Source of the DNA: Macrostomum lignano
Lineage: Eukaryota
Reading direction: 5' to 3'
Length of the DNA stretch: 64,000 nt
Assembly: GCA_002269645.1 (NCBI GenBank)
Contig: NIVC01000035.1
Coordinates: forward strand, 310,001 to 374,000
The notes below the pieces were generated by a model. It saw only the letters and a program-made list of their open reading frames with translations. It had not been told where the DNA came from and ran no database searches. This document shows, in pieces, positions 6,885-37,714 of the stretch (positions within the stretch are counted from its first letter, which is position 1; each line of letters opens with the position of its first letter). The position numbers and the translations under genes were made by a program.

Positions 6885-7370
6885 CCCTCTGCACTCTCCC
6901 CTCTCCATTCTCCCCACTCCTCTCTCCATTCTCCTCATTCCTCTCTCCCCTCTCCCAAATCCCCTCTCCATTCTCCCCACTACTCTCTCCATTCTCCCCA
7001 ATCCCCTCTCCATTCTCCCCACTCCCCTCTCCATTCTCCCACTACTCTCTCCCTCGCCCCTCTCCTCTCATCTCTCCTCTCTCCTCTCTCTTCTCTCCTC
7101 CTCTCTCCTCTCTTATCTCTCCTCTCTCCTCTATTATCTCTCCTATCTTCTCTGTCCTCTTTCCTCTACTCTCTCTCTCCTCTCCACTCTCCACTCCTCT
7201 CTCTCTGATCTTCTCTCCCCTCTCCTCTCTCTCCTCTCCCCCTCTCTCCTCCTCTCCCCTCCTCTCTTCCCTCTTTCCTCTCTCATCTTCTCTTTTCCTC
7301 TCTCCTTTCTCCTTCTCTCTCTCCTCTCTCCTCTCCCCTCTCTCTCCTCTCTCCTCTCTACTCTCACCCA
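6885..7370. repeat. CT-rich array (CCCTCTCCATTCTCCCCACT-type units grading into CTCTC low complexity)
   Basis: Direct reading. Confidence 0.9.
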
Positions 7371-9618: not shown

Positions 9619-9978
9619 GCTCAGCATCGGCGGAAGTTGCCGCTCTGACGCTACGAATGAGCGCCGGTCCTCAAACCGACATTCAACCAGGAGGTCGAGT
9701 TGACATCAGCTGCGCTTTCGACCCTCCGGCAACTTACATATTCTGGCGGTTCTCGTCTAACAACGGCGTCACCTGGAACAAACTGGCTCTGTGCCACGCC
9801 GATTCAGGCAAGTGCAGCCTGCAGGAGCAGTTCAAGAATTGGACAGATAGGCTGGCCACCCGAGTTAATGGCAGTCTGACTCTGTGGAACGCCAGCAAAG
9901 AGCAGGATGGCGTCTACGAGTGCGAAGGCATTCGGAATACTGATGCGGCTAAGGATAACCGCAGCATCACCATTGTCA
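9619..9978 (+). CDS. Echinoid-like exon: N-terminal V-type Ig domain (Ig1)
   Basis: ttgcag|GC ... GTC A|gtgagt, phase 1-1; GGRVDISC..YIFWRF..QDGVYECEG. Confidence 0.9.
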
Positions 9979-15900: not shown

Positions 15901-18900
15901 TCTGCAGCTCCGCTCCTGCCTCGCCAGACACACGATGTATTTACACTTGATTTGAATGAACTTTTTTTTAACTTTCTCTCTCAGACAATTCAGTCGAGTG
16001 AGCTTGGATTGACTGTCAATTACCTGGGAACAGAAGGGCTTGAGAGGGTATTTGCGGCGCTGAGTGACAACACACGCTGCAGTGGCTGCTCACCTCTCAG
16101 CACTGAGCTAATATATAAGAAAAAGCCAATTCAAATTGTGAGCACAAAAATGAGCAAAAGGCTTTTAATTCAATTGAATGGGCTTGTTGGCGAGTAGACT
16201 TAAAGAGGCTGCTAGAGGCTAGCTGGGATTAAGGTCTGATAAAATAGAGAAAAGAGGATTAAGGATTATCCCTAAGCAGGAAGTGGACATGCAGTTGTCA
16301 CGAGAAGCGCCGTGAGTCAGCTGGTCTCATATTTTCTGCGCTCATTCCGCCTTCTTGTCGCGTGTCAAGAAGCTTTTAATCCCATTGGAAAATTCCTTTC
16401 TTAACGTCTCTAAACACTTGAAATTCCTGAGCACTCGTGTCCGCTCAATAGCGGACGGGAGGATGGGACTCGAGGTGCTGAAGTCTCCGCCGATCGAGCG
16501 TCTGGGATGAGTCAGGACCGACCCCGCACAGCCCCGGCTAACAAGCTGGTGGTTGCGCCATCATCACAGGAACTGCCTGCCTCTCTCAGCGGGATAAATT
16601 GAGTGGAATAAAATTCCTAATTAGTCTCAGGTTGAACTCCTTCACACTGCTGCCAATTGTCAGTGCTTCTAACAACGGATTCTATCCTCTTCCTTTTTTT
16701 AGGGAAGCCGAACTTTATATCAAAATTTCAAAATTTCCCCAAACCTTCACCGTAAACCTCGCTAAACCAGCTTCATCAACCCCGATAACTTTCCCCATCG
16801 CAGCACCACCGGCTCAACCGACTGTGACCGCCGCAGACTCCGACACCGCCATCGAAGGCAGCCGACTTAATCTTACCTGTCAATCAGTGGGCGGAAATCC
16901 GCCACCCCAGATTAGCTGGTCTGTTCGGCAGCGGTCTCAGACTGAGTACTCGGCACTGGACTCAATGTCTCCAGTCTTCAGCTGGCAACCGCCAGCACAG
17001 AAATTCGGGAGCACTGTCGCTTCGGTGTCTGTGCTGACAGCATCTTCTGCTAATTTGGCAGGAATTGTGTGTCACACTGCACACCCACTGGCTAATGCTA
17101 CCAGCAATGAGCTGCTGATTAAAGTGCTCTGTGAGTGTCTCCTTGCTCTTGTACGCTCGTATATTAGGTCAGCCTAGAGTGAGCTTTTAGTAGGCTTGAG
17201 TACAGTTTGAGGTAGCCTTAGTTCTCTTGAGAAGGTTTGTGGCAGACTTGAGTAGGCTTGTGGTAGACTTGAGTAGGCTTGTGGTAGACTTGAGTAGGTT
17301 TGCGGTAGACTTGAGTAGGTTTGTAATAGACTTGAGTAGGCTTGTGGTAGACTTGAGTAGGCTTGTGGCAGACTTGAGTATAAGGTTTGTGGTTGACTTG
17401 AGTAGGTTTGCCGTAGACTTGAGTAGGTTTGCGGTAGGCTTGAGTAGGTTTGCGGTAGACTTGAGTAGGTTTGCGGTAGTCTTGAGAAGGTTTGCGGTAG
17501 GCTTGAGTAGGTTTGCGGTAGACTTGAGTATAAGGTTTGTGGTTGACTTGAGTAGGTTTGCCGTAGACTTGAGTAGGTTTGCGGTAGACTTGAGTAGGTT
17601 TGTAGTAGACTTGAGTAGGTTTGCGGTAGACTTGAGTAGGTTTGCGGTAGACTTGAGTAGGTTTGTAGTAGACTTGAGTAGGTTTGCGGTAGGCTTGAGT
17701 AGGTTTGCGGTAGACTTGAGAAGGTTTGTGGCAGACTTGAGTAGGTTTGCGGTAGACTTGAGTAGGTTTGCGGTAGACTTGAGTAGGTTTGTAGTAGACT
17801 TAAGTAGGTTTGCGGTAGACTTGAGTAGGTTTGCGGTAGACTTGAGTAGGTTTGCGGTAGACTTGAGTAGATTTGTGGTTGACTTGATTAGATTTGTGGT
17901 TGACTTAAGTAGGTTTATGGTAAACTTGAGTAGCTTTTTGGTAGACTTGAGTAGGTTTGTAATAGACTTGAGTAGGTTTGCGGTAGACTTGAGTAGGTTT
18001 GTAATAGACTTGAGTATGTTTGCGATAGACTTGAGTAAGTTTGTGGTAGACTTGAGTAGGTTTGCGGTAGACTTGAGTAGGTTTGCGGTAGGCTTGAGTA
18101 TAAGGTTTGTGGTTGACTTGAGTAGGTTTGCGGTAGACTTGAGTATAAGGTTTGTGGTTGACTTGAGTAGGTTTGCCGTAGACTTGAGTAGGTTTGCGGT
18201 AGACTTGAGTAGGTTTGCGGTAGACTTGAGTAGGTTTGCGGTAGGCTTGAGTAGGTTTGCGGTAGACTTGAGTAGGTTTGTAGTAGACTTGAGTAGGTTT
18301 GCGGTAGACTTGAGTATAAGGTTTGTGGTTGACTTGAGTAGGTTTGCCGTAGACTTGAGTAGGTTTGCGGTAGACTTGAGTAGGTTTGTAGTAGACTTGA
18401 GTAGGTTTGCGGTAGGCTTGAGTAGGTTTGCGGTAGACTTGAGTATAAGGTTTGTGGTTGACTTGAGTAGGTTTGTAGTAGACTTGAGTAGGTTTGCGGT
18501 AGACTTGAGTAGGTTTGCGGTAGACTTGAGTAGGTTTGCGGTAGACTTGAGTAGGTTTGTAGTAGACTTGAGTAGGTTTGCGGTAGGCTTGAGTAGGTTT
18601 GCGGTAGACTTGAGTAGGTTTGTGGTAGACTTGAGTAGATTTGCGGTAGACTTGAGTAGGTTTGCGGTAGACTTGAGTAGGTTTGCGGTAGGCTTGAGTA
18701 GGTTTGCGGTAGACTTGAGTAGGTTTGTAGTAGACTTAAGTAGGTTTGCGGTAGACTTGAGTAGGTTTGCGGTAGACTTGAGTAGGTTTGCGGTAGACTT
18801 GAGTAGGTTTGTAGTAGACTTAAGTAGGTTTGCGGTAGACTTGAGTAGGTTTGTGGTTGACTTGAGTAGGTTTGCGGTACACTGGCTTGAGTATAGAGCG

Positions 18901-21900
18901 GCCTGAATGTTTCGCTACCTCTACGCCCCCCGTCGCTCTCCACCGCCGCAGACGCTCCTAAGCTGCCGCGGGTGGCGTCGCAGCGAGCCATCGCAGGCAG
19001 CTCCGTCGGCATCAACTGCACCGCCGATGCCAACCCAGTAGCCAAACTAACTTTGCTCAAATCCAATTCCACTTTGTCAGGTAAAAAACAAGCAGAATTT
19101 ATCGCACTGCACTACTCTCATCAGTGGCAAGTAGGAAATTTTATTCAAAAAACTAAAAAAACGAATTGAAATTTCATGGCAGAGGCGTCCCAGCCGACTC
19201 TGCTGCACTCTGTGCCTTCGGCAACTCGGAACCTCACCGGAGTTTACAGCTGCCTGGCCAGCAACTCCATCGGCTCCGCACGTCGAGACTTCAGCCTGAC
19301 GGTGCTGTACCCGCCAGCTGTCCAGGCGCCTAGCTCCGTGACGGTTCGCGAAGGCGCCAGCCTGCAGGTCGGCTGCAACGTCGAGGCCGAGCCGCCGCCG
19401 TTCACCGTCAACTGGCGGCACCCGGGCAGCGGCCGGCTCCTCGGCAACTCCAGCCGGCTGCTCATTACTGCGGCCGCGAGAACAGACGCCGGCGAGTGGA
19501 CCTGCGAGGCACAGAACCTGATGTCGCCGAGCGATGGCCGAGAGCCAAGGAACGGCCGAGGCTCGGCCACCGTCCAGGTGACGGTGCAGTACCCGCCGGG
19601 CATGCCGGTGGTGGCGTTCACCGCAGGCACCTCGGTGGTTCAGTCGGGCAGTCGGGTTGCTCTGGTGTGCAGGCCCAGCCTGCTCAGCCCGGGTGTACCC
19701 GAGCCGGGCTTCTCGTGGACTATCAGGACATCCACGTCGACCAGGGTGGCTACGGGACCGGCTCTGACAATTGAGTCGACGGGTCTGGAGGACAGCGGAG
19801 AGTACGCCTGCGTGGCGGAGAACTCCGCAGGCCGAGGTCCCGCTGCCAGCATCAGCCTGACGGTGCAGCAGCCGCCGCGGTGGCTAGACGATTCTACAGC
19901 GACGACAACGACAACTACGACCAGTGTCGGAGTGGGCAGCTTTGCTTTGGTTTGCGCGGTGCGCGGTCGGCCAGCCTGCGAAGTTGCGTGGAGTCGAAAT
20001 GGTCGCGAGCTCGACCCTGGGGCGTATAGTGTCAGCAGAGAGTTCGACCCTGCGCTGTGAGTTGGGAAGTGCCAATCAGACACCAAATAAGGGGTAGAGA
20101 AGTTTCACTGGCCAATCAGACACCAAATAGGACTTAGAGAAGCGCCACTGCCAATCAGACACCAAATAAGGGGTAGAGAAGTGCCACTGGCCAATCAGAC
20201 ACCAAATAGGGGTAGAGAAGTGCCGCTAGCCAATCAGACACCAAATAGGGGGTAGAGAAGTGCCACTGGCCAATCAGACACCAAATAGGGGTAGAGAAGT
20301 GCCGCTAGCCAATCAGACACCAAATAGGGGGTAGAGAAGTGCCGCTAGCCAATCAGACACCAACTAGGACTTAGAGAAGCGCCACTGCCAATCAGACACC
20401 AAATAAGGGGTAGAGAAGTGCCGCTAGCCAATCAGACACCAAATAGGGGGTAGAGAAGTGCCACTGGCCAATCAGACACCAAATAGGGGGTAGAAAAGTG
20501 CCACTGGCAAATCAGAGACCAGCGTTCACATTTAAAACGAGTGGGCGAGAGTTAACGAACGCTTTTCTTATCAACTATTAAAGTCGCATATACACAATGC
20601 CACTCACCTGACCACACCAACGCACCAGCTTTGTGACGAGAAGCACCCTGCGCTTCGTTGGTCCGAGTCGCAGCATTCTACAGCCGAAAGACAACGGGGC
20701 GTACGGCTGTTCGGCACAGAATTCGCACGGCAAAATAACTCGAACTTTTAATCTAGTTGTCGAGTGTAAGTAGTGCTGTTGAAAGTATTTATAAACTATA
20801 GAACAGCCAAAGGGAGACGACATAGCATAAACATCTCAGGATCGATTTGAGTAAGCTTTGGGTTTCCTATAGCCTTAGAGGCTGGGTAGCGGTCGTGCCA
20901 ACCCCCGAAGCACAGAGTGAGGTCAGTCGATTGAGCATAACAACTGCATGCTACTTCAAGTACCAATTACGCCTCAAAAAACGCTTCAGTTCCGCCGCTG
21001 ATTCAGACCAGCACCACCAAGCTGGCCTTGGATCCGGCAGCCTCCGAGATCTCGCTGGAGTGCGAAATCCTGGCTCAGCCAAAGCCAAAAGTGACCTGGG
21101 AGGTCGGGTCGAACAGCTACGTGAGCAACGTCAGTCAGGACACGCTGACGCCGTACAAGCACCGAGCAACGCTGTTCGGCGTTCGCTCGCACGGTCGGTT
21201 CACCTGCGTTGCTAGGAACGCCCTGGGCGAGGCCAGACACAGCGTAGACGTGGTCCCTAGAGGACCGCCGGATCCGCCAACCAACTTGAGAATGTTGTCG
21301 CCTCCGAACTGGGATCGAGTCTCGTTGTCATGGCAACCAGGATTCGACGGAGGCCTACAGGCATCGATGTGGCTTCGCTGCACTCCGCCGCCTGAGGGTC
21401 GATCAGCTGACGAACCAATTCGAATCGAGCACGACTCATCGCTGCGGACGGTGGCAGCCAACCTGACGAATCTGCTCCCGGCAACCAACTATTCCGTGGT
21501 TGTCTTCGCCAGAAACCAGCTCGGTTCCGGTTCGAACTCGGCGGAGTTGCGCTTCACCACGTCGGAACTGGCGATGCCCACCGTGACGGGGCTGCGACGA
21601 GACGGCAACAGCGCGACAACTCTGCTGCTGGACGCTTGGCCGGCGGGCTACTGCCTTCGGGTGGAAGCTGCCGCGTCGGTAAAAAAAAGTCAAACGCAGC
21701 AGCAGCAACAACAGCAGAAGTTGGACGCCTCCGAGCGACAGTGGCGTCAGGTGAAGCTGCAGCAGTCAGCTTGCGACGCTCCCAGCGATGGACGCCTAAC
21801 GGGCTTGGATCTATCCACTCTGACCTATCGACTGTCCCTCTGTCTGGCTGACAGGCTAGCCGTGTGCGGCCCTGCTGCCACCACTGAGAATAGTGAGTTG

Positions 21901-24900
21901 ATGAATTATAGTGTTTGAGACCTTCGGATAAAGAAATGTTTGTTCGTGTAGATGGTTTTTGGTTGACTGATTAACGAACTGCATTTCAGCTACATGCTCT
22001 TTTCGCACTCTCCTACTTTCGTTAGTAGTAACAGTACTTCTGTGTTGCTACGTTAAAATCGCGAAAACATTGGTAGGATTTAGATTTTCTAATATAGCTT
22101 TTTGCCGCTCATTTGTGCCTAAGCGCATTGAATTTAATCCAGGATAGGCTTGCCAATGTACCGGAGCTTTTGTCTATGGTAGCAAGGCTGGCACAGCGGC
22201 ATTTCATTTGGTCCAACAAGCATCAATTTGGTCCATTGCTTCATCTGCAACTGCTGCGGAGGTGCAACATCATACCCAGAATTGTGGACCATATGCTGGG
22301 CTGTCGAACCAAGGCCATTGGCTTGTGATCGAAGCGCTCGACAGAGATGAACACCCAAAGGACATTGCAAGGCTGCTGAATGTAAAAGAAAATATGGTTT
22401 ACAGCATCCATCAGCGCGTTGAAACCACTGGCGGCCTAAATCGCTTGCAAAGGGGTGGCAATCGCCAAGGCAAGTTGCGAGAGCCTCAGGTCCAACTGCT
22501 ACTCGATGCAGTTAAGACGAACCCTTTGTTGACGTTGTAGAAGTGCAGAAGAAGTTGAAGGAACAATTTGGACTATCAGCAGAGCTCTGGAAAGGCGACT
22601 GAAAATTGATGGTAGAGACGCTGATATTCCAGCGGTACTCAACAACCTGCAGACGGTTGCTAGGGGGCAAGAATTTGCCGAATGGCTCACGATCGTTTGG
22701 ACCAAATTGATGCTTGTTGGACCAAACTAAATGCTTCTGTGCCAAGCCTTGCTACCATAGACAAAAGCTCCGTTACATTGTGTGTACATGCCTGTGTGGT
22801 GATGAGAAAGTCAGGGCCGCAAAATGCAAGTATCGAGACTGAGTGCTGACGATAGCCGTTCGGGTCAACTAAGGGCAGCTGTGTTCAGCTGCGCAGCGAC
22901 CGCGCTTTGTAGAACACGCAAAACCTGTCAGATGCGCATCGGCTGTTTCTGACAGTCGCAGAGTGCAGCCCATCAGGAGCTCCCTAATTAACGGGGCCGC
23001 ATGCTTAGACCAACCACCGCTGCAGGGGCAACTTTTTGACAGATTTTTTCTCCCAGCAAAAACAGCTCCAACCGTCCCCTGACTGCCTACCTACCTATCT
23101 AGCAGTGAGTGGAACAGAATGTAAAAACCGAAAATGTCAATCATTTTGTCTCGGCCACCAGGGGAAGGCAGTGAGAGCTTCAGGTAACGGTTCTGCAGTT
23201 GTCTTTTCCACTCTCTTCTTAACCCTCGTTCAAGGAGGCCAAGAACTAAGAATCTGGAGTGGAAACTCTTCCCAAAATCCCTCATTCTTGTGTGTGCTCA
23301 AGTCAGCGAACTGGGCAGCGGTTGTGGGACCATGTCGCCGAAGGCGTTGCGCCAGGGAAGCTGACAGACCTCCTGCTGTGCGAAAGAGCTGTCACTCCAA
23401 GTTTTGGCCCTGAGTCTCCAGGGCTCCCACAACCCCTCCCGGCAATGGCAAGACAATTAGCCAGAGGCAGGAAAGCCACTTCCTTTCTACACCTTACCTT
23501 CCACAGGTTTGTCAATTTCCCAAGAAGCCTAGACCGCCATGCAGAATCAATAGAAAGTTTCAGGGGGAGCTGCGGTTTACCTGCTTTGCAACACCTCATC
23601 CCCAGTTTCAAGCGCCATTTCTCACCTCTTGTTCTTTATTCTACCAAAAAATTTATGCAATGGCTGCTTCACGCACTGCTGTGTGAAGTTCTCTTGAGAC
23701 GGGCCTGGGGAGGGTTGGTGGCAAGCCGCTGCTGCAACATGCGATTCTTTTTGCCGCCTCTGCAGTCTGCTGACTTTCCTGTCTTCTGCCCGACAAATCT
23801 GACAGAAATCTATTGCTTGTATGTACTCTCACTGCTCTCACTACTCTCACTGCTCTCACTGCTCTCACTGCTCTCACTGCTCTCACTACTCTCACTGCTC
23901 TCACTGCTCTCACTGCTCTCACTGCTCTCACTGCTCTCACTGCTCTCACTGCTCTCACTGCCTCCCTGCCTCTGCCAGTTGCCACTCTCGCCTGCTCAAG
24001 CCTATCCTGATATCCCTCTCCTCTCTCCTCTCCCTCTCTCCTCTCTTCTCTCTCCTCTCCCTCTCTCCTCTCTCCCCTCTCCTCTCCCTCTCTCCTCTCT
24101 CATCTCTCCTCTCCCTCTCTCCTCTCTCATCTCTCCTCTCCCTCTCTCCTCTCTTCTCTCTCCTCTCCCTCTCTCCTCTCTCATCTCTCATCTCTCATCT
24201 CTCATCTCTCTTCTCTCCTCTCTCCTCTCTCTTCTCTCCTCTCTCCTCTCTCCTCTCTCATCTCTCCTCTCCCTCTCTCCTCTCTCATCTCTCCTCTCCC
24301 TCTCTCCTCTCTTCTCTCTTCTCTCCCTCTTTCCTCTCTTCTCTCTCCTCTCTCCTCTCCCTCTCTCCTCTCTTCTCTCTCCTCTCTCATCTCTCCTCTC
24401 TCCTCTCTCATCTCTCATCTCTCTTCTCTCCTCTCTCCTCTCTCCACTCTCATCTCTCCTCTCTCCTCTCTCCTCTCTCCTCTCTCCTCACTCGTTTCTC
24501 CCCTCTCCTCTCTCCTCTCTCGTCTTGTTAAGTTGTTTTTGCTTCTCAGAAAAAAGAGGAAAAAAGAGAGCAGTCCCAATAATCTTCTCATGCTTTGTAA
24601 TTACTGTACAGAGAATATCTCTTCGAAAAAAATTGTCCCGAATCCCGTTCTCACACACCCTGATTACGCAACCCAAACTGCAGTCCTCTTCAAGCCACAC
24701 AGGGTCACTTTGTTCTCTTCCACTAATATCGACCAGGAATCAAGGCTCAGAAAAAAAATCAATCAAAAAGTTGGGATTAGCCAAAGAGAAGAAAGGGGAG
24801 AGAAAATGATGGGCTTTGTCGTTTGATCCTCGCTCCCCTTCTCCCCTGTAGCTTTGATGCCTCTTGACAGCGTATGGGGCAAAGGAGATCATTCGCGGGG

Positions 24901-27900
24901 AGAGCCATCCGTCAATCTTCAGTCATTGTGAGTCATACTAGATGCAGTTTCACATGGCTACAATACTTACTTCTACTTGGAAGTAAATCGAGGGTTTAGT
25001 GTTTAGGTTCATGCTGAAGGTACTCCGAACTTCAGGGGTTGGTCTATAACCGATATGTGGTTCTCAGAGGTCAAGTCCCTAAGTTTCAGGGCTCAGAGCC
25101 TAGGCTTACCGGAGGTCAAGTCCCTAAGTTTCATGACTCAGAGCCTAGGCTTACCGGAGGTCAAGTCCCTAAGTTTCAGGGCTCAGAGCCTAGGCTTACC
25201 AGAGGTCAAGTCCCTAAGTTTCAGGGCTCAGAGCCTAGGCTTACCAGAGGTCAAGTCCCTAAGTTTCAGGGCTCAGAGCCTAGGCTTACCAGAGGTCAAG
25301 TCCCTAAGTTTCAGGGCTCAGAGCCTAGGCTTACCAGAGGTCAAGTCCCTAAGGTTCAGGGCTCAGAGCCTAGGCTTACCAGAGGTCAAGTCCCTAAGGT
25401 TCAGGGCTCAGAGCCTAGGCTTACCAGAGGTCAAGTCCCTAAGTTTCAGAGCTCAGAGCCTAGGCTTACCAGAGGTCAAGTCCCTAAGTTTCAGGGCACA
25501 GAGCCTAGGCTTACCAGAGGTCAAGTCCCTAAGTTTCAGGGCTCAGAGCCTAGGCTTACCAGAGGTCAAGTCCCTAAGGTTCAGGGCTCAGAGCCTAGGC
25601 TTACCAGAGGTCAAGTCCCTAAGGTTCAGGGCTCAGAGCCTAGGCTTACCAGAGGTCAAGTCCCTAAGTTTCAGAGCTCAGAGCCTAGGCTTACCAGAGG
25701 TCAAGTCCCTAAGTTTCAGGGCACAGAGCCTAGGCTTACCAGAGGTCAAGTCCCTAAGTTTCAGGACTCAGAGCCTAGGCTTACCAGAGGTCGAGTCCCT
25801 AAGTTTCAGGACTCAGCCTCCTACCCTCAGGTCATCATACTTCACAATAAGCAACCCTAAGGCCACTAGGCTTCTCGGAGGACATTATTCCCTTGATTGA
25901 GTTCGAGTTCTATCCACTAATCACCTCAATTTGCACTATTGATTAGGGATTTGGCCGGGTGCCTCTGCGCTGATGACTTTAACTCGCTTTTTAGCTCGTA
26001 GTCTCTTGGCAAGAAGAAAATCAGTCGCAAGATGCAAATCAAGTGCAGAATCTTCTATCATGCTGATCTAGATTTGAGTGGGCGATAAAATGGCGGAAGG
26101 CAGCCGTAAGAACTGCGAGAAACAGAGTCGGGAGAGGGTGAGGGAGAGAGAGTGAGAGAGAGAGGGTGAGAGAGGGTAAGGGAGAGAGGGTAAGGGAGAG
26201 AGGGTAAGGGAGAGAGGGTAAGGGAGAGAGGGTAAGGGAGAGAGGGTAAGGGAGAGAGGGTAAGGGAGAGAGGGTAAGGGAGAGAGGGTGAGGGAGAGAG
26301 GGTGAGGAAGAGAGGGGGACAGAAAGGGTGAGGGAGATAAGGTGAGGGATAGAGGGGAGAGAGTGGGGAGAGAGAGGATGAGGGAGGGAGGGAAGAGAGA
26401 GGGGAGAGAGGGTGAGGGAGAGAGGGGAGAGAGCGGGTGAGGGAGAGAGGGGAGAGGTGAGGAAGGAAAGTAGAGAAGATATCACAGAGCCAGGTGCAGT
26501 TTCTGTCAGCGTCAGCAAAGCACCAGAGTGACCTAGTCAGCTGGTCGCAATCAAGCCTAATTTGATAAATGTTCGCGAATAATCACGCCAGCCAAGTGCG
26601 AGCTCGGCCAGGACCTCTCTCCAACTCCAAGCCCTTCCTGTAGAGCCAGTGAGTGACTCATATGGGGATCGAGCCTGCCCTAAATTCTGTCCCTGCCTCA
26701 GCTCCCCAAGCGCCTTCCCTCGCCTTTTAGCACCAGCCAATACGGCGGGAGAATCAAATCCCCAAACCCATTTATAGTCAGTTCCCCTACCTAGCAGTGC
26801 TAACACGGATCCCACATGGCTAGCAAAGTCAGCCTGTTAAATCGGTAGCAATCTGGTCGAATTAATTAACAGCTGACAGCAGATTAGAGTCACCAAAAGT
26901 AATGTCAAATCCGCCCAAAGCTGACAGTGGCGGAAACCGTGTCAGAGCGGTCCTGTCAGACATGCGTGAGTTCCGATCTTGATTCCTGTTTTAGCCTGGA
27001 TTAGCCGTGTCGATAATCTCTGCTCGACCCCACCGGATACCCTTCTCGAACGGGGACAGCTTTCAATCAACCTCGCCGTGCAAAGAGGCTGACTTGATTT
27101 GCGTTTTGTTTGTTTAAACTGATTTTTGACGCTTTTTCTGAACTAGGTCATTTCTAGGAAATAGGAAGGAAATTTTATAGTTGAACAGTGCAATGTTTTT
27201 GCAAGTTTTTGTAAGAAGTTGATTGGGTAGATATTGGGCAGGGTAGACAGGTAGAATAGGTAGGCAGGAAGATTGGTTAGACAGGTAGGTTGGGTAGACT
27301 GGTGGATTGGGTAGACACGTAGATTGTGTAGACAGGTAGATTGGGTAGACAGGTAGATTGGTTAGACAGGTAGATTGGGTAGACAGGTAGATTGAGTAGA
27401 CAGGTAGATTGGGTAGACAGGTAGATTCAGTAGACAGGTAGATTGGGTAGACATAGATTGGGTGGACAAGTAGATTGGATAGACAGGAAGATTGGGTAGA
27501 TGAGTAGATTGGGTAGACAGGTAGATTGGGTAGACAGGTAGGTTGGGTAGACAGGTAGATTGGGTAGAAGGGTAGATTGGGTAGACAGGTAGGTTGGGTA
27601 GAAGGGTAGATTGGGTAGACAGGTAGATTGGTAGACAGGTAGATTGGGTAGACAGGTAGATTGGGTAGACAGGTAGATTGGGTAGACAGGTAGATTGGGT
27701 AGACAGGTAGATTGGGTAGACAGGTAGATTGGGTAGACAGGTAGATTGGGTAGACAGGTAGATTGGGTAGACAGGTAGATTGGGTAGACAGGTAGATTGG
27801 GTAGACAGGTAGATTGGGTAGATGATTATATTGGGTAGATGATTAGATTGGGTAGACAGGTAGATTGGGTAGAAAGATAGATTGGGTAGACAGGTAGATT

Positions 27901-30900
27901 GGGTAGACAGGTACATGTAATTGGGTAGACAGGTAGATTGGTAGACAGGTAGATTGGGTAGACAAGTAGATAGGGTAGTCAATGAGAAGTGTCTACCCCG
28001 CAGCCTCCCCACTGAATTGCAGTGTCGGGCTTCCCGGAGGTGAGCTCGCTCACCATCATCATAGTGGCTGCGTTCTGCACGCTGCTCATCATCTGCCTGG
28101 TGGCCATCCTGGTCTTCTTCTGCTGCCGGAACCGCCCGCTAGCCAGCAAGGAGGCCGCGTCTTCCGGCGATGCCGCAACATCGGCTGCGAGAGCCAGCGA
28201 GCTGGACAGCCCCCCGGCCAGACGGGACAGCAGGCTGTGAGCTGCTACCCAATCTACCTGTCTACCCGATCTACCTGTCCACCCAATCTATGTCTACCCA
28301 ATCTACCTGTCTACCAAATCTACCTGTCTACCCAATCTACCTGTCCACCCAATCTATGTCTACCCAATCTACCTGTCTACCAAATCTACCTGTCTACCCA
28401 ATCTACCTGTCTACCCAATCTACCTGTCTACACAATCTACCTGTCTACCCAATCTACCTGCCTACATAATCTACATGCTCACCCAATTTACCTGTTTACC
28501 AAATCTACCTGTCTACCCAGTATACCTGTCTACCCAGTATACCTGTCTACCCAGTATACCTGTCTACCCAGTATACCTGTCTACCCAGTATACCTGTCTA
28601 CCCAGTATACCTGTCTACCCAGTATACCTGTCTACCCAGTATACCTGTCTACCCAGTATACCTGTCTACCCAGTATACCTGTCTACCCAGTATACCTGTC
28701 TACCCAGTACACCTGTCTACCCAGTATACCTGTCTACCCAGTATACCTGTCTACCCAAACTACCTGGACACAATCTACCTGAAATGAATCTGAAAACTGC
28801 CACTCCACCCAGCTCGGCTCCTTCCCATCACCTCACCCGCAGGCGCCGGCACCCGGAGCCGGACCTCATGGCCTCCACCTACAAGTCCTTCAGCTCCGGC
28901 AAGCCCTACGCCATGGTCTCCCCCCACCCCAGCCTGACCAGCACAGACGAGACCTCCATTGACCAGACCAACAAGGTGTTCAGCACTCTGCTCAGCGCGA
29001 ATCATCCCATTGTTGGGAATAACAGTAAGTGACCTCTGCGCTTAGTGAGCTGGATGGAGTGCAGAGGCTGGAATTAGATCCCTGAATGGCAAAAGGGGGC
29101 GGAAGAGAAGGGGTGGAGGAGAGGGGGTGGACGAGAGGGGTGGAAGAGAGGGGGTGGAAGAGAGGGGGCGGAAGAGAGGGGTGGAAGAGAGGGGCGGAGG
29201 AGAGGGGGCAAGAGAAAGGGGCAGAAGAGAGGGGGAAAAGAGGGGCGGAAGAGAGGGGCGGAAGAGAGGGGCGGAAAAGAGGGAGGGGCGGAAGAGAGGG
29301 CGGAGGAGAGGGGCAGAAGAGAGGGGAAGAGAGGGGCGGAAGAGAGGGGGCGGAAGAGAGGGGCGGAAGAGAGGGGGCGGAAGAGAGGGGCGGAAAAGAG
29401 GGGCGGAAGAGAGGGGCGGAGGAGAGGGGCAAGAGAGGGGGAGAAGAGAGGGGGAAGAGAGGGGGCGGAAGAGAGGGTAGGAGGGGCCTATCACCAGCCT
29501 CCAGAAGAGACACCAGTCAGCTTCTAACCTCAGTTCAAGAACAGTCTGCACTGTTTCGTCCGCACTTATCCCACAAACATCAGCAACTTATAACACGTAC
29601 TTGATTAGCAAAGTTCAGTGCTTCAGACTCCACAATAAAGTTGATAAATTCGTTAATTGAATCAATTTATTCTGTCGGGCCAAGTTCGCCTGCCCTGAGC
29701 CAGGGTGGGGTGGCCCACACAAAGGCTGATTGATTGGCTGTGGATGTCCCGGCTCCCGGCTCATTCAAGAGGAATAGGCCCGGATTAGGATTAAGCTATA
29801 GTGATGGCTAAGGATACTAGCATATCATTATTAGGCAGCGTTCAACTTGAATTTTTATATATTCGGTAACGCCAAGCCTGAGCATGCCATCAGAGCCAGT
29901 TCAGGTTCATCTGAGGTCACTTTGTCAATCCTAAATCTGAATACGACTTGATTTTATAACCCAATGTAACGGAAAGCATAGTTATGTACAAACTTAACTA
30001 CTGAGCTGAAGTCTAGTCAGTAGAAATATAGGAATTTTATAAGCTTTTTTTCGGCAAAATCTGATTACAGGCTCCCTGGCATCAGATTGCATTGAAATGG
30101 AGCTGTGCGATTGTCGTAATTATGGTCTGTGAACCCCTGAAATTAACCAATTAATCAGGGATAATCTCACCTGTAACTGGCCTCTCAATTAATTCTATCA
30201 CATTGGCAGCCTGATAGCAGTTTACGGAACTATGTGGGATAAATTTGACTCAAAACCTCACATAGCCTGTTAACCTTCGAAACTTTACTATATAAAAGCT
30301 ATACTACTCATACTGCTGGTCAGTAGTGCGGCGCTAATGCAGATCGTAATTCACAACTCACACTGGTAGTTGTAAATAGCAGCTAGGCAACAAAAATGCT
30401 AATATTTCTGCTTCTACAAGAACTATATCTATAAACCATCAATCCAGACGCATCTAGTCACTCCTGACACCCATTTATAGACACTCCTGACATCCATTTA
30501 TAGACACTCCTGACACCCATTTATAGACACTCCTGACACCCATTTATAGACACTTCTGACACCCATTTATAGACCCTCCTGACACCCATTTATAGACACT
30601 CCTGACACCCATTTATAGACACTCCTGACACCCATTTATAGACACTCCTGACACCCATTTATAGACACTCCTGACACCCATTTATAGACACTCCTGACAC
30701 CCATCCATAGACACTCCTGACACCCATTTATAGACACTCCTGACACCCATCCATAGACACTCCTGACACCCATTTATAGACACTCCTGACACCCATTTAT
30801 AGACACTCCTGACACCCATTTATAGACACTCCTGACACCCATCCATAGACACTCCTGACACCCATTTATAGACACTCCTGACACCCATTTATAGACACTC

Positions 30901-31408
30901 CTGACACCCATTTATAGACACTCCTGACACCCATTTATAGACACTCCTGACACCCATTTATAGACACTCCTGACACCCATTTATAGACACTCCTGACACC
31001 CATTTATAGACACTCCTGACACCCATCCATAGACACTCCTGACACCCATCCATAGACACTCCTGACACCCATTTATAGACACTCCTGACACCCATTTATA
31101 GACACTTCTGACACCCATTTATAGACACTCCTGACAACCATTTATAGACACTTCTGACACCCATTTATAGACACTCCTGACACCCATCTGCAGTCACTCC
31201 TGATGCCCAACAATCGTTCGTAGAGGATTTTTAGACTTGTTTTAACCTTCAATATAAATTTTTGTTACACAATTGCTACAGATAATTAATTCAATGTCGC
31301 TTCCCAATGTCACCCCCGATTGCAGACCTGGAGTCGGGGTCAGACAACAGCGGCACATTCCTGCACCCGGGCCGGCAAAGAAAAGTCATTTATGAAGTTG
31401 TCGTCTGA
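9619..31408 (+). CDS. ed: Echinoid-like Ig/FN3 single-pass cell adhesion molecule, 5'-partial; join(9619-9978,16804-17130,18952-19080,19183-20056,20629-20765,20990-21892,28023-28236,28843-29024,31326-31408)
   Basis: Nine exons with AG/GT boundaries and compatible phases; 3209 nt plus 1 upstream nt gives 1070 codons ending in TGA at 31406-31408. Translation shows 7 Ig domains (C...W...DxGxYxC), an FN3 domain (GPPDPPTNL..VSLSWQPGFDGG..LLPATNYSVVVFARNQLG), a TM helix and C-terminal RKVIYEVVV. This architecture and tail resemble Drosophila Echinoid (C-terminal EIIV). Orthology is inferred, not searched. Confidence 0.85.
11348..11905. repeat. 14-bp minisatellite (GACAGATAGAAAGT)
   Basis: Direct reading. 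Confidence 0.93.
12650..13545. repeat. 20-21-bp purine-rich minisatellite (GAGGAGTGACAAGGAGGAGT)
   Basis: Direct reading. Confidence 0.93.
14182..14600 (+). mobile_element. tRNA-derived SINE, copy 1
   Basis: A-box-like TAGCCTGGTGG and B-box-like GTGTTCGTTTC; body collinear with 55350-55620 (CACCCAGCTGT.AAATG, CCCCAGT.CTTGGACTGA, GCTGAGCTGTC.GTT.CACATCTG, GGCAGGTGT.ATCAAT.GTGA). Confidence 0.75.
14889..15675. repeat. GA-rich (GAGAG/GAGAGAG) array
   Basis: Direct reading. Confidence 0.95.
16804..17130 (+). CDS. Echinoid-like exon: Ig2
   Basis: atcgcag|CA ... CTC T|gtgagt, phase 1-1; EGSRLNLTCQSVGGNPPPQISW..IVCHTAHP. Confidence 0.9.
17185..18885. repeat. 21-bp minisatellite (GACTTGAGTAGGTTTGCGGTA) with 24-bp variants
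   Basis: Direct reading; fills intron 17131-18951; degenerate at the 5' edge. Confidence 0.97.
18952..19080 (+). CDS. Echinoid-like exon: first half of Ig3
   Basis: ccgcag|AC ... TCA G|gtaaaa; YAPKLP..SVGINCTADANPVAKLTL. Confidence 0.85.
19183..20056 (+). CDS. Echinoid-like exon: end of Ig3, Ig4, Ig5, start of Ig6
   Basis: ggcag|AG after a 102-nt intron; ends CT|gtgagt (phase 2); GVYSCLASN, DAGEWTCEAQN, DSGEYACVAEN. Confidence 0.92.
20068..20520. repeat. ~40-bp minisatellite (AGAAGTGCCACTGGCCAATCAGACACCAAATAGGGGTAG)
   Basis: About 11 units filling intron 20057-20628. Confidence 0.95.
20629..20765 (+). CDS. Echinoid-like exon: second half of Ig6 (not in the ORF track)
   Basis: caccag|C ... 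GAG T|gtaagt, phase 2-1; FVTRSTLRF..KDNGAYGCSAQNSHGKITRTFNLVVE. Confidence 0.9.
20990..21892 (+). CDS. Echinoid-like exon: Ig7, FN3 and a degenerate membrane-proximal region
   Basis: ttcag|TT ... AAT A|gtgagt; ISLECEILAQPKPKVTW..GRFTCVARN; FN3 motif; poly-Q run. Confidence 0.92.
22154..22784 (+). mobile_element. Internally deleted Tc1/mariner (IS630-type) DNA transposon, non-autonomous
   Basis: ~82-bp imperfect TIRs (22154-22235 and 22698-22780), each with a duplicated TTTGGTCCA motif. They enclose a transposase N-terminal HTH remnant (LVIEALDRDEHPKDIARLLNVKENMVYSIHQRVETTGG..GGNRQGKL..AVKTNPLLTL*). No DDE domain; TA follows the right end at 22785. Confidence 0.8.
23825..24520. repeat. (ACTGCTCTC)n 9-mer (23825-23960) followed by a CT-rich array (24015-24520)
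   Basis: Direct reading. Confidence 0.93.
25066..25815. repeat. 45-bp minisatellite (AGAGGTCAAGTCCCTAAGTTTCAGGGCTCAGAGCCTAGGCTTACC), ~17 units
   Basis: 15-aa periodicity in two open frames; no spacers between units. Confidence 0.97.
26130..26470. repeat. 14-bp GA-rich array (GGGAGAGAGGGTAA)
   Basis: Direct reading. Confidence 0.9.
27221..27978. repeat. 17-bp minisatellite (ATTGGGTAGACAGGTAG), upstream arm of an inverted pair
   Basis: Direct reading. Confidence 0.96.
28023..28236 (+). CDS. Echinoid-like transmembrane exon
   Basis: ttgcag|TG ... CT|gtgagc, phase 1-2; LTIIIVAAFCTLLIICLVAILVFFCC followed by RNR (stop-transfer, Cys pair). Confidence 0.9.
28245..28780. repeat. 17-bp minisatellite (CTACCTGTCTACCCAAT, later variant ATACCTGTCTACCCAGT), reverse complement of 27221-27978
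   Basis: Direct reading. Confidence 0.96.
28843..29024 (+). CDS. Echinoid-like cytoplasmic exon
   Basis: cacccgcag|G ... AAC A|gtaagt, phase 2-1; an in-frame alternative acceptor at 28812/28813 is possible. Confidence 0.8.
29092..29482. repeat. 13-15-bp G-rich array (GAGGGGCGGAAGA)
   Basis: Direct reading. Confidence 0.9.
30457..31205. repeat. 23-bp minisatellite (GACACTCCTGACACCCATTTATA)
   Basis: Direct reading; about 31 units. Confidence 0.97.
31326..31408 (+). CDS. Echinoid-like terminal exon with a PDZ-binding-type C-terminus (YEVVV*)
   Basis: ttgcag|AC CTG GAG...GTC GTC TGA; phase matches the donor at 29025; LESGSDNSGTFLHPGRQRKVIYEVVV*. Confidence 0.88.
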
Positions 31409-35831: not shown

Positions 35832-37570
35832 TCAGTTCTCACTCTGCTGCTCACCGATCTGCAGCCGAAGATGCCGCAGGCGAATCTCCATCATAAGATC
35901 CTCTTCATCGTCGACCTCACCGCCGTAGCGCCAAGCCGCAGTGTCGGGCGCCAGTTTTCGAGCTGACAGCGGCGCCTCCTGCGGCCGGCGGCGGCATGGA
36001 TTCGGCTGGCTCGAATTCGAGTTCGAATGAAGCACTGGCTGAGCTCGGAGCCGATGGGACTCTGCGTTGAGTGTGCAGAGAGGGGATGAGGTGTCGTATC
36101 GAATAGAGCAAAAGTTGGCGCCAAATCCAGACGAAGAAAATCTGGCGCCAAATAAAAATGAACAAAGATGCAAAAGCAGCGATTCGCGAACTCACCAGAC
36201 TCAAATATCTGCAGGTTCCTCAGCAGGTCAGAAGACGGCAGAACTGGCTTAGTGGGTCGAAGCAGCAGAGCCGCTGGTCGAATACGCAGCTGCTTCCGCT
36301 GCTGCTGCTGCTGCTGCTCGGAATTCGCCGGCTGCCGGAGTTCAGGCGAGCGCGGGCCCGAGCGAGCGTTAGCCATGACGAACTGCTTCGGCGAATTCAA
36401 ATAGAATGGCAGCTCTGGACAATTAGCCTTTGGCCAACTAAGCCGAACTCGTTGCCATAGCGACAAAAGCTGTGGCATGTTTTTCTGCGAAAGCAGCCAT
36501 TTTACATCGAATAGTGCAGCAATATTCGATTCGTGCGTCTCCAAAGAAATCTTCTGGCCGACAAAGAATCGTTTGAAATAAGCCGAATCGCTGAATGCCG
36601 CATTCGAGCTGCCGAATGCATCGCCGATGTTGCACTTGATTCGAACTTTGTAGACATCCTCGAGGATTTGAATAGCGTTTGAGTCGGTCAGATTCTCAGA
36701 CACTGAGTTGGAAGCGATCAGCATGCTGATTGGCAGCGAGTTGGTCAGCAGAATCTTCGTCTTCAGAACCTTCATCGGATCCTGGCTAGAAATTTCCACA
36801 ACGGAGTCGTCTTTCAGCTCGATAGTGACACCGATATCTTTGAAAAATGCATGCACAGCGGCGGCTGGCGTGGAGGATTCAATGCTGGACAGTTGGAAGC
36901 TCTTTGGAATCGCTCCGTTGACAGTCTGGACTACCTGGTTCCAGTGATTGACGGGAATGCGATCCGCAGTGTAGAGCTTGGACATTGGCTGGTTGAACTT
37001 GCGAACTAGGCTCTCCTGAATGAGATTGGCAACAAAGACAACCTTAGAGCCGCTCTCCATGATGCCGCGGAGCACAAAAGTGGCGGGAGCTTCCTTCTCG
37101 ACGGAAATAGAGATTGATTCGTAGCAAGCAATGGAAGCTATTCGACTAAGCTCGTTTGCGATGGCATCCGAAATCGATTGCAGACTAGGAAATACCATGC
37201 GGATGATGACTAGCTGGTTTCGTCGGATGTTTTGCACCGACGCGGTCAGAACCTCGGCCAGACGATCTTCCGCTTCTGGAGGGCATGGCTCGCGTTTTAA
37301 ATCGAGCTCGGCCGGAGTGATGACAACCTCGTCTGATCGCGACATGCCAGGCGTATCAGCAGATGATGAACTAGAGTCGCTCTGGATAAAAGCATCTTCC
37401 GAATTGCCTTTTAACTTTCGGCCTTTGTTGACAACTTCTGGAAAGTTGATCAGGGTCTTGGATGCCACCTGAAGCTTCTTATGGAAGCTACCCTTTTTCC
37501 CAATGAGATGACTGTGGTCGTCTCTAGACACGTTGATGCGCATAATGGGTCCTTTCAGTAGATGATACAT
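35832..37570 (-). CDS. Bicaudal-C/GLD-3-like KH-domain RNA-binding protein; join(37570-36196,36061-35832), ~534 aa
   Basis: N-terminal MRINVSRDDHSHLIGKKGSFHKKLQVASKTLINFPE matches BicC-type KH1 (MDVSHTEHSHVIGKGG..IHFPD). A 134-nt phase-1 intron (G|gtgagt...acgcag|AG) links to a final exon ending QIGEQQSEN*. The real start may be the ATG at 37543. Confidence 0.75.
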
Positions 37571-37714
37571 TGTTAAAGTTTTTAGTAGAAAAGCAGAAAT
37601 AAAATCAGAGCAAAGAAAATAACGGAGTTACTTTCAAGCGGCTGGCGCTCTAAAAAGTTATTAGTATATAAGGAGATAAACTAATGGCTGGAACCAGTTA
37701 GGACGCCAGGCGGA

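What the first reader, a model, noticed from the sequence alone, without database searches (positions are those of the whole stretch)
27221..28780. Transmembrane exon enclosed by inverted arrays of the same 17-mer: candidate RNA switch between membrane and secreted isoforms
Seen: the upstream intron ends in ~750 bp of ATTGGGTAGACAGGTAG, stopping ~44 nt before the acceptor. The downstream intron starts 8 nt after the donor with ~530 bp of the reverse-complement unit. This is the only pair of complex arrays in the window that share a unit, and the only exon they bracket is the 214-nt TM exon. Inference: the pre-mRNA can fold into a duplex of about 500 bp with the exon in a ~265-nt loop and the 5' splice site at the stem base. 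Established: flanking inverted repeats (e.g. inverted Alus) promote exon skipping, back-splicing and ADAR editing. Worked out from the sequence: skipping (21892 to 28843) shifts the frame and gives the whole ectodomain plus a 31-aa Ser/Pro/Thr tail (SAGTRSRTSWPPPTSPSAPASPTPWSPPTPA), with a stop at 28935-28937, 87 nt before the last junction. The product would be a soluble decoy or an NMD substrate. Array length polymorphism could tune the ratio.
Basis: partly seen in the sequence, partly recalled or inferred. Interest (0 to 1): 0.85.

Follow-up and report, generated by a model that had tools for sequence, protein, structure and literature searches.

The report
Inverted minisatellite arrays around an exon
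In a flatworm (Macrostomum lignano) cell-adhesion receptor gene, the exon encoding the membrane anchor sits between two 17-bp repeat arrays of opposite orientation that could zip the RNA into a 250-600 bp duplex, but the evidence suggests a by-product of this genome's repeat-filled introns, not a proven switch.

Summary
The upstream array is 738 bp of GGGTAGACAGGTAGATT and ends 44 nt before the acceptor. The downstream array is 537 bp of the reverse complement and starts 8 nt after the donor. Between them lies a 214-nt TM exon. Skipping it gives the stated 31-aa tail and stop.

The window is Macrostomum lignano scaffold NIVC01000035.1. The gene is BOX15_Mlig000261g3, an Ig/FN3 adhesion receptor with nephrin/SYG-2-like architecture. 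Two other copies of the gene in the same assembly have the same inverted layout, so it is not an assembly artefact. Their arm lengths differ (983/628 and 259/767 bp). Predicted stems are about 497, 592 and 247 bp.

Several points argue against an evolved switch:
- All annotated mRNAs include the exon.
- The copies differ by only 0.4-3%, so shared layout says little about selection.
- The abundant repeat variants of each arm are absent from the other arm.
- 36% of the window is tandem arrays, and arrays lie close to splice sites throughout the gene.
- Intron 1 holds another inverted array pair with no exon between its arms.

No RNA data could be consulted. Best reading: an incidental structure that probably causes some skipping or back-splicing. 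Interest 0.4.

The parts
27241..27978 (+). Upstream arm: 17-bp minisatellite, unit GGGTAGACAGGTAGATT, 43.4 copies, at the 3' end of intron 7 (21893-28022). The distal third is degenerate. 27630-27815 is a run of perfect canonical units.
27979..28022 (+). 44-nt array-free end of intron 7 with the acceptor (..ctccccactgaattgcag|). It is the same in all three gene copies.
28023..28236 (+). Exon 8, 214 nt (length mod 3 = 1). It encodes MSGFPEVSSLTIIIVAAFCTLLIICLVAILVFFCCRNRP..., that is the single transmembrane helix plus the juxtamembrane tail. It is included in the annotated mRNA.
28237..28244 (+). Donor GTGAGCTG, the 8 nt between the exon and the downstream arm. It is partly paired at the stem base in the predicted folds of two copies (g3, g4).
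28245..28781 (+). Downstream arm: the reverse-complement unit CTACCCAATCTACCTGT, 31.9 copies, making up 89% of intron 8 (28237-28842). The proximal block 28245-28518 has the canonical unit. The distal block 28519-28756 has the arm-specific variant (reverse complement of GGGTAGACAGGTATACT).
20990..21892 (+). Exon 7 (last Ig domain, FN3 domain and stalk). Its donor ATA|GTGAGT is the one that would join exon 9 if exon 8 were skipped.
28843..29024 (+). Exon 9 (cytoplasmic tail). In the skipped frame it reads SAGTRSRTSWPPPTSPSAPASPTPWSPPTPA and stops at 28935-28937.
31326..31408 (+). Exon 10, the last coding exon (..LESGSDNSGTFLHPGRQRKVIYEVVV, then stop).

Best explanation
The feature is a real pair of 17-bp minisatellite arrays in opposite orientation. 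They occupy the ends of the two introns that flank the transmembrane exon (exon 8) of a Macrostomum lignano Ig/FN3 adhesion-receptor gene.

Most likely it is a by-product of the way minisatellites fill introns in this genome. One array family became seeded on both sides of a 266-bp exon segment in opposite orientation, by a local inverted duplication or template switch. Each arm has since expanded and contracted largely on its own, with shared descent or occasional arm-to-arm sequence transfer.

Shown here:
- the arrays, their orientation and their positions;
- the gene model;
- the presence of the architecture in three gene copies with different arm lengths;
- the thermodynamic dominance of the arm-arm duplex in predicted folds.

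Inferred: in some nascent transcripts the arms pair into an imperfect duplex of about 250-600 bp. This loops out exon 8 and crowds its 5' splice site. The result is some exon-8 skipping (an out-of-frame product with a 31-aa tail, either degraded or a truncated secreted ectodomain) and/or a 214-nt back-spliced circle. The exon-including mRNA remains the main product. On this reading the duplex is tolerated splicing noise or a mild drag on expression, not an evolved membrane/secreted switch.
For: - Arrays and complementarity.
- Organism and gene: (L003 gives identical TRF rows to the window; protein P0027 matches the window exons).
- The annotated proteins of all three copies contain the TM exon.
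- The same inverted layout occurs in g4 (983/628 bp) and g2 (259/767 bp). Array edges are conserved and interiors are turned over.
- The copies differ by only 0.4-3% in unique sequence.
- Arm-specific variants are not mirrored. GGGTAGACAGGTATACT occurs 12, 7 and 13 times in the downstream arm only. GGGTAGACACGTAGATT occurs 8 times in the upstream arm of g4 only.
- A 24-nt compound variant is present in both arms of g3 and in neither arm of g4 or g2. This points to common descent or inter-arm transfer, which keeps complementarity without any selection on the RNA.
- Tandem arrays make up 35.7% of the window. The genome average for simple plus tandem repeats is 15% (PMC5730564).
- Other introns of the gene are 79-93% one array, starting 14-56 nt from the donor.
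- A second inverted pair, (AGAGG)n/(CCTCT)n, has 361-nt arms at 94% complementarity and no exon between them.
- A further array-array duplex is predicted inside intron 7 (283 pairs).
- About half of adjacent array pairs in this gene (7 of 13) have an exon between them, counted.
- Folds.
Against: - No RNA-seq, small-RNA or circRNA data could be consulted, so the level of skipping is unknown and could be high or regulated.
- All three copies keep a stem of at least 247 bp, and the arrays stop at identical distances from the splice sites.
- The pair is the only complex-unit pair in 64 kb, and it encloses exactly the one exon whose loss would release the ectodomain.
- The origin of the inverted seeding is not explained. 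I found no target-site duplication, no complementarity in the flanks and no other copy of the unit.
Confidence: 0.55

Rival explanations
1. Evolved RNA switch. Pairing of the arrays is used to regulate exon-8 skipping, giving a secreted decoy ectodomain or NMD-mediated down-regulation. Array copy number tunes the ratio.
For: - The duplex is strongly favoured in silico, with the exon in the loop and the 5' splice site at the stem base.
- The TM helix lies on its own exon, and skipping leaves the whole ectodomain intact.
- The architecture is kept in three copies.
- Inverted intronic Alus are experimentally shown to pair and to shift a neighbouring exon from constitutive to alternative (PMC2533698).
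- The gene does use alternative splicing elsewhere: a 54-nt cassette exon is annotated as included in g2 only.
Against: - No skipped isoform exists among the proteins on record.
- Skipping is out of frame and yields an arbitrary Ser/Pro/Thr tail.
- Stem length varies 2.4-fold between copies in one genome with no sign of constraint.
- Arm-specific variants are uncompensated.
- The copies are too young for conservation to mean anything.
- Exon-less inverted array pairs exist in the same gene.
Confidence: 0.2
2. Intronic hairpin-RNA locus. The 250-600 bp duplex is diced into small RNAs (an endo-siRNA source), or cleaved in the nucleus, which lowers output of the host gene copies. The exon in the loop is incidental.
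For: - The two arms form a long near-perfect inverted repeat, transcribed on one pre-mRNA of an expressed, annotated gene.
- From my own knowledge, Drosophila hpRNA loci such as hp-CG4068 have arms built of tandem repeats.
Against: - No small-RNA data were available.
- The unit occurs nowhere else in the 64-kb window.
- A search with the array-encoded peptide found no other M. lignano sequence, so no trans target is evident.
Confidence: 0.1
3. DNA-level effect. The inverted arms act as substrates for intrachromosomal recombination that can flip the 266-bp exon segment, producing polymorphic or somatic inactivation of a gene copy, or they make the site fragile. The RNA duplex would be secondary.
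For: - The arms contain runs of identical units up to about 190-240 bp long.
- A compound variant shared by both arms of g3 only is compatible with inter-arm exchange.
Against: The exon is in the sense orientation in all three copies. Gene conversion without crossover, or shared ancestry, explains equally well.
Confidence: 0.06
4. Foldback-type or other transposon whose terminal inverted repeats are made of tandem subrepeats; or two independent insertions of an array-bearing mobile element.
For: The form resembles Foldback elements, with long inverted arms made of short tandem units. The (AGAGG)n pair in intron 1 does carry a partial inverted copy of its flank.
Against: - No target-site duplication at the outer or inner boundaries.
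- No complementarity beyond the arrays.
- The 'loop' is a host coding exon, in frame and in the mRNA.
- No other copy of the unit in the window.
Confidence: 0.05
5. Assembly artefact: a mis-joined or mis-oriented repeat.
For: The assembly is built from long noisy reads in a very repeat-rich genome (PMC5730564).
Against: Three separate contigs (NIVC01000035.1, NIVC01000981.1, NIVC01001914.1) show the same orientation and the same unique junctions on all four array borders. They have different arm lengths and their own SNPs.
Confidence: 0.02

Closest known systems
Exons flanked by inverted intronic repeats, such as inverted Alu pairs, which loop out exons and promote skipping, back-splicing and A-to-I editing (Lev-Maor et al. 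2008, PMC2533698; the circRNA literature is cited from my own knowledge)
   Same: Reverse-complementary sequences lie in the two introns flanking one exon. The cross-exon duplex is predicted to dominate. The 5' splice site is next to the stem.
   Different: - The arms are minisatellite arrays, not dispersed transposon copies. Pairing can therefore slip in 17-nt registers, and stem length changes with copy number (247-592 bp among three gene copies).
- The arms lie within 8 and 44 nt of the splice sites.
- No RNA evidence exists yet.
- The organism is a flatworm.
Drosophila hairpin-RNA (hpRNA) endo-siRNA loci whose arms are tandem repeats, e.g. hp-CG4068 (from my own knowledge)
   Same: A long inverted repeat made of tandem units, transcribed as one RNA.
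   Different: Here it is intronic, with a coding exon in the loop. No small RNAs or targets are known.
Foldback transposons (long terminal inverted repeats composed of short tandem subrepeats; from my own knowledge)
   Same: The overall geometry: inverted arms made of short tandem units around a short central segment.
   Different: No target-site duplication, no complementarity outside the arrays, and the central segment is an in-frame host exon.
Palindromes whose arms are homogenised by arm-to-arm gene conversion, e.g. human Y-chromosome palindromes (from my own knowledge)
   Same: A compound variant shared by both arms of one copy only fits arm-to-arm exchange.
   Different: The arms here are only 84-90% complementary, and most variants are arm-specific.
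Soluble isoforms of Ig-superfamily receptors made by skipping the TM exon. I recall a nephrin isoform lacking the TM exon, but could not confirm it in the held library.
   Same: The TM helix is on a separate exon in an IgSF receptor with nephrin-like architecture. Skipping would leave the ectodomain intact.
   Different: Skipping here shifts the frame. No such isoform is annotated.

Membership tests
Exon looped out by reverse-complementary intronic repeats | Complementary sequences in both flanking introns | tested here: met
   arms of 738 and 537 bp, 84-87% complementary over up to 287 nt without gaps.
Exon looped out by reverse-complementary intronic repeats | Pairing across the exon is favoured over pairing within each intron | tested here: met
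   MFE folds give 496-497 cross-exon pairs against 14-27 pairs within the upstream arm. This persists in 3.3 kb and 5.4 kb of context. It is an in-silico equilibrium result only.
Exon looped out by reverse-complementary intronic repeats | Skipped or back-spliced junction observed in RNA | not testable with these tools
   No RNA-seq access. The proteins on record all include the exon. No relevant paper was found.
Exon looped out by reverse-complementary intronic repeats | Evidence that the duplex forms in vivo (A-to-I editing or structure probing) | not testable with these tools
   No read data.
Foldback-type transposon | Long inverted arms made of short tandem subrepeats | tested here: met
Foldback-type transposon | Target-site duplication at the outer ends | tested here: not met
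   No shared word of 6 nt or more at the outer boundaries.
Foldback-type transposon | The central segment belongs to the element and not to the host | tested here: not met
   The central segment is exon 8, in frame, and part of the annotated mRNA in three copies.
Foldback-type transposon | Dispersed copies in the genome | not testable with these tools
   The M. lignano genome cannot be scanned here. There are no other copies in the window. The peptide search found none, but annotated proteomes exclude repeats.
hpRNA / endo-siRNA locus | Long inverted repeat on one transcript | tested here: met
   Both arms lie in introns of one annotated gene.
hpRNA / endo-siRNA locus | Small RNAs of about 21 nt derived from the arms | not testable with these tools
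   No small-RNA data.
Nephrin / Sns / SYG-2-like IgSF adhesion receptors | N-terminal V-set plus CD80-like C2-set domains, further Ig domains, one FN3 domain, a single TM helix and a short cytoplasmic tail | tested here: met
   Pfam hits on P0027: V-set 44-130, C2-set_2 148-237, six Ig_3 stretches, fn3 726-819. The TM helix is in exon 8.
Nephrin / Sns / SYG-2-like IgSF adhesion receptors | Orthology (closest relatives are family members) | tested here: inconclusive
   Named hits at 22-27% identity include nephrin and nephrin-like proteins, but also contactins and roundabout-like proteins. The best PDB hits are contactin-2; SYG-2 matches only residues 108-198.
TM-exon-skipping soluble receptor isoform | Skipping gives a defined open reading frame for a soluble protein | tested here: inconclusive
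   The ectodomain is kept, but the frame shifts to a 31-aa tail with a stop 87 nt before the last annotated junction. The product could be either a secreted protein or a decay substrate.

The most novel reading that the evidence does not exclude
The inverted minisatellite pair is a copy-number-tunable 'RNA zipper'. Stem length (247, 497 and 592 bp in the three gene copies of one animal) would set how often the transmembrane exon is looped out. Each copy would then deliver a different ratio of membrane-bound to secreted or degraded receptor, and fast array turnover would give heritable, quantitative variation in that ratio. If inverted same-family arrays around exons are common in this genome, where 15% is simple plus tandem repeats, this would be a general and previously undescribed way for minisatellites to control splicing.
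Probability: 0.15. Interest if true: 0.75.

Novelty: new variant of a known kind. Interest (0 to 1): 0.4.

Why it matters
If the duplex affects splicing, it would show that minisatellite arrays, and not only dispersed transposons, can serve as the complementary arms that loop out an exon. Stem length would then change at minisatellite mutation rates.

The locus is unusually testable. Three near-identical gene copies with stems of 247, 497 and 592 bp coexist in the sequenced DV1 line. RNA-seq exists, and transgenesis is established in this species (PMC5730564).

If, as I think more likely, inclusion is barely affected, the locus is still informative. It would be a natural example of a spliceosome coping with a 500-bp duplex that ends 8 nt from a 5' splice site, and more generally of introns that are 80-93% one tandem array.

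Tried and rejected
- Assembly artefact: rejected, because the same layout appears in three contigs.
- Foldback or MITE-type element, or an inverted segmental duplication: alignment of the outer and inner flanks scores at shuffle level, and there is no target-site duplication.
- Dispersed array family: I searched the 5.8-billion-protein collection with the 17-aa peptide that the open strand of the array encodes. The only hit was an unrelated 706-bp 'crustacean metagenome' contig with a unit matching 13 of 17 positions. This is uninformative for M. lignano, because annotated proteomes exclude repeats.
- Search for a TM-less isoform among database proteins: the 90% cluster has five members, none skipped. 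I ran no further search on the skip-junction peptide, because the collection evidently holds no transcript-derived M. lignano fragments for this gene.
- Literature: nothing on M. lignano circRNA or exon skipping, on this gene, or on inverted minisatellites around exons. My recollection of a nephrin isoform lacking the TM exon could not be confirmed in the held library.
- Rfam: no known RNA family in or near the arrays.
- Compensatory co-variation between the arms: not seen for the abundant variants. One shared compound variant was seen.
- Conservation as evidence of selection: rejected, because the copies are only 0.4-3% diverged.
- One script failed on a missing file and two on my own boundary guesses. 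All were repeated successfully.

Full report
**1. What is in the sequence**

Tandem Repeats Finder reports two period-17 arrays. The first is 27241-27978: 43.4 copies, 88% matches, unit GGGTAGACAGGTAGATT. The second is 28245-28781: 31.9 copies, 90% matches, unit CTACCCAATCTACCTGT, which is the exact reverse complement.

Ungapped inverted arms of up to 287 nt are 84-87% complementary. Allowing 3 mismatches, the unit occurs 67 times in the 64-kb window, all inside these two arrays; 0.2 are expected by chance.

Between the arrays lies a 266-nt array-free segment that holds a 214-nt exon (28023-28236). Its acceptor reads ...ctccccactgaattgcag|TGT and its donor reads GCT|gtgagctg. The upstream array ends 44 nt before the acceptor and the downstream array begins 8 nt after the donor.

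Joining 21892 directly to 28843 gives SAGTRSRTSWPPPTSPSAPASPTPWSPPTPA and a TGA at 28935-28937, 87 nt before the 29024 junction.

**2. Where the window comes from and what the gene is**

Translated exons match a Macrostomum lignano protein almost perfectly. Its 90% cluster holds three full-length proteins from three scaffolds of assembly GCA_002269645.1 (Mlig_3_7): BOX15_Mlig000261g2, g3 and g4.

The locus of g3 (L003, NIVC01000035.1) gives TRF rows identical to the window, so the window is that scaffold at an offset of 14878. A brute-force spliced reconstruction of g3's protein P0027 on the window gives one solution:

| Exon | Coordinates |
|---|---|
| 2 | 9619-9978 |
| 3 | 16804-17130 |
| 4 | 18952-19080 |
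| 5 | 19183-20056 |
| 6 | 20629-20765 |
| 7 | 20990-21892 |
| 8 | 28023-28236 |
| 9 | 28843-29024 |
| 10 | 31326-31408 |

Exon 1 lies upstream of the window.

The protein has a V-set domain, a CD80-like C2-set domain, about six further Ig domains, one FN3 domain, one TM helix (exon 8) and a short tail. This is nephrin/Sns/SYG-2-like architecture. Orthology is not settled, because contactins and roundabout-like proteins score similarly.

The annotation is transcriptome-guided (PMC5730564). In all three copies it includes exon 8.

**3. The same architecture in three gene copies**

The sequenced DV1 line carries duplicated chromosomes, and 180 Mb of the assembly is in blocks at least 95% identical (PMC5730564). 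The three copies compare as follows:

| Copy | Locus | Upstream arm | Downstream arm |
|---|---|---|---|
| g3 | window | 738 bp | 537 bp |
| g4 | L001 | 983 bp (57.8 copies) | 628 bp (36.9 copies) |
| g2 | L002 | 259 bp (15.4 copies) | 767 bp (44.9 copies) |

In all three copies the orientation is the same. All four array borders are the same, and so are the 44-nt and 8-nt distances to the splice sites. The degenerate edge units are shared and the interiors differ, which is ordinary minisatellite behaviour.

This disposes of an assembly artefact and confirms that arm length is variable. But the copies differ by only 0.4-3% in unique intronic and exonic sequence. The shared layout is therefore what neutrality predicts and says little about selection.

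**4. Would the RNA fold as proposed?**

At equilibrium, yes.

- The MFE of 27200-28800 is -1032.5 kcal/mol, with 497 pairs between the arms, 54 pairs inside the exon, and the donor region partly paired at the stem base.
- The g4 and g2 versions give 592 and 247 inter-arm pairs.
- The duplex is unchanged when 3.3 kb or 5.4 kb of context is folded (496 pairs).

These are thermodynamic predictions. Co-transcriptional kinetics, helicases and RNA-binding proteins are not modelled.

**5. Is the arrangement special?**

Less than it looks.

- Tandem arrays cover 35.7% of the window, against a genome average of 15% for simple plus tandem repeats.
- Arrays reaching almost to the splice sites are the rule in this gene. 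Intron 17131-18951 is 93% one array, which starts 56 nt after the donor and ends 68 nt before the acceptor. Intron 20057-20628 is 79% one array, starting 14 nt after the donor. Intron 8 is 89% array.
- The neighbouring SPRY-RING gene has an intron splitting its SPRY domain that is almost filled by the array at 61566-62097.
- Of 13 adjacent array pairs inside the gene, 7 have one or more exons between them. Once a local pair exists, bracketing an exon is close to a coin toss.
- Inverted array pairs are not tied to exons. In intron 1, (AGAGG)n at 3715-4125 and (CCTCT)n at 4794-5179 have 361-nt arms at 94% complementarity and a spacer of about 670 nt with no exon.
- In the 5.4-kb fold, the CT-rich array 24016-24525 pairs with the GA-rich array 26132-26451 inside intron 7 (283 pairs).

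What is non-random is the existence of two neighbouring arrays of the same complex unit. In a shared 10-mer comparison of all 35 arrays this is the only complex-unit pair. That points to a local origin and not to two draws from a genome-wide pool.

**6. How the arms evolve**

The most abundant derived unit of the downstream arm is GGGTAGACAGGTATACT, with 12, 7 and 13 copies in g3, g4 and g2. It never occurs in any upstream arm. Upstream-specific units, such as GGGTAGACACGTAGATT with 8 copies in g4, never occur downstream. Most turnover is therefore arm-autonomous and uncompensated, and it costs 2 mismatches per 17 nt over the distal half of the stem.

Conversely, a 24-nt compound variant is present once in the upstream arm and twice in the downstream arm of g3, and in neither arm of g4 or g2. 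It is a unit with a 2-nt deletion followed by a GGGTGGACA unit. The arms therefore share descent as arrays, or occasionally exchange sequence. Either process keeps them complementary without selection on RNA structure.

Complementarity stops at the array borders: flank alignments score at shuffle level, and there is no target-site duplication. A Foldback or MITE-type insertion, or an inverted duplication of unique sequence, is thus not supported. How the unit came to sit on both sides of the exon in opposite orientation remains unexplained. A replication template switch across the 266-bp segment is my guess.

**7. Best explanation and rivals**

I put 0.55 on an incidental structure. On this reading the arms pair in a fraction of nascent transcripts and cause some exon-8 skipping and/or a 214-nt circle, while the exon-including mRNA stays the main product.

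| Explanation | Confidence | Note |
|---|---|---|
| Incidental structure | 0.55 | see above |
| Dicing of the hairpin into small RNAs | 0.10 | cannot be tested here |
| DNA-level inversion or fragility | 0.06 | cannot be tested here |
| Transposon | 0.05 | |
| Assembly artefact | 0.02 | |

The fate of the skipped mRNA is uncertain. The 50-55-nt rule for nonsense-mediated decay is a vertebrate rule. An annotated 54-nt cassette exon (30071-30124, included in g2 only) would add further junctions downstream of the premature stop.

**8. Comparison with what is known, and novelty**

The arrangement works like exons looped out by inverted intronic repeats. The two membership features testable here are met: complementary arms in both introns, and cross-exon pairing favoured. 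The RNA-level features cannot be tested with these tools.

It differs in that the arms are minisatellite arrays. Pairing can slip in 17-nt registers, and stem length changes with copy number. I found no paper describing this, nor any on circRNA or exon skipping in M. lignano. I therefore rate it a new variant of a known kind, with function unproven.

Interest is 0.4. It is a clean candidate that can be tested immediately in a tractable model, with three natural stem-length 'alleles' in one genome. The surrounding evidence, however, favours a by-product of repeat-filled introns.

Noticed in passing
window 3715-4125 and 4794-5179 (intron 1 of the same gene): A second inverted array pair, (AGAGG)n/(CCTCT)n, has 361-nt arms at 94% complementarity and a spacer of about 670 nt with no exon. 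The left flank of the first array (about 3620-3700) recurs in reverse complement inside the spacer (about 4527-4590), which suggests an array-plus-flank unit that was duplicated or mobile.
   Followed up: partly
window introns 17131-18951, 20057-20628, 28237-28842; also about 61535-62130 in the neighbouring gene: Short introns consist 79-93% of a single minisatellite array that starts 8-56 nt after the donor and ends 61-107 nt before the acceptor. Arrays seem to expand until only the minimal splice signals are left. I found no description of this in the M. lignano literature searched.
   Followed up: partly
window 24016-24525 and 26132-26451 (both inside intron 7): A CT-rich 7-mer array and a GA-rich 14-mer array are predicted to pair with each other (283 pairs) in the 5.4-kb fold. 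GA/CT arrays of alternating orientation also lie at 6883-7365 and 14907-15673, so the pre-mRNA may carry several array-array duplexes.
   Followed up: partly
window 30071-30124 (+): A 54-nt in-frame cassette micro-exon (SSLASDCIEMELCDCRNY) lies between exons 9 and 10. Its sequence is identical in the window copy, but it is annotated as included only in gene copy g2 (protein P0026). This is evidence that the cytoplasmic tail is alternatively spliced.
   Followed up: partly
window 27445-27468 (+); 28276-28299 and 28342-28365 (-): The 24-nt compound variant GGGTAGACATAGATTGGGTGGACA is present in both arms of this gene copy and in neither arm of the two other copies. This points to arm-to-arm sequence transfer or to shared ancestry of the arrays.
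   Followed up: yes
window 28519-28756: The arm-specific variant of the downstream array reads CUGUCUACCCAG|U on the RNA. It forms a tandem series of pyrimidine-rich YAG motifs that resemble acceptors inside intron 8. The canonical reverse unit contains no AG at all. Each forward unit upstream carries a weak pseudo-donor, CAG|GUAGAU, lacking the +4A/+5G seen in 7 of the gene's 8 real donors.
   Followed up: no
window 28230-28235 and 28839-28844: The hexamer GCAGGC occurs at both ends of intron 8, which is 89% array. A short direct repeat at intron ends can mark intron gain by insertion, but it overlaps the acceptor consensus and may be chance.
   Followed up: no
L004 1-706 (ENA ERZ922609, 'crustacean metagenome' contig): The last intron of a V-ATPase subunit d gene (exons ...[32 protein letters not shown] | AKIDNYIPIF) is filled, starting right at the donor, by a 17-bp array with unit GTTTACCCAATTCACTT. 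That unit matches the unit studied here at 13 of 17 positions. The source organism is unknown.
   Followed up: partly
window 22148-22537 (+), inside intron 7: An open frame with a winged helix-turn-helix (HTH_29/HTH_23), as found at the N-terminus of Tc1/mariner-type transposases. It is probably a transposon remnant. Just upstream (about 21932-22094), the g4 copy lacks about 160 bp.
   Followed up: no
window 55351-55420 (+): Rfam reports a tRNA match just above the gathering score (32.3 against 29 bits), but ARAGORN finds no tRNA. It may be a tRNA-derived repeat.
   Followed up: partly
window 35894-37627 (-), 46257-48965 (-), 59329-62720 (+): Neighbouring genes: a 578-aa open frame with one KH domain, a DENN-domain gene, and a SPRY plus C3HC4 RING gene whose introns are also filled by arrays (59681-60916, 61566-62097).
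   Followed up: partly
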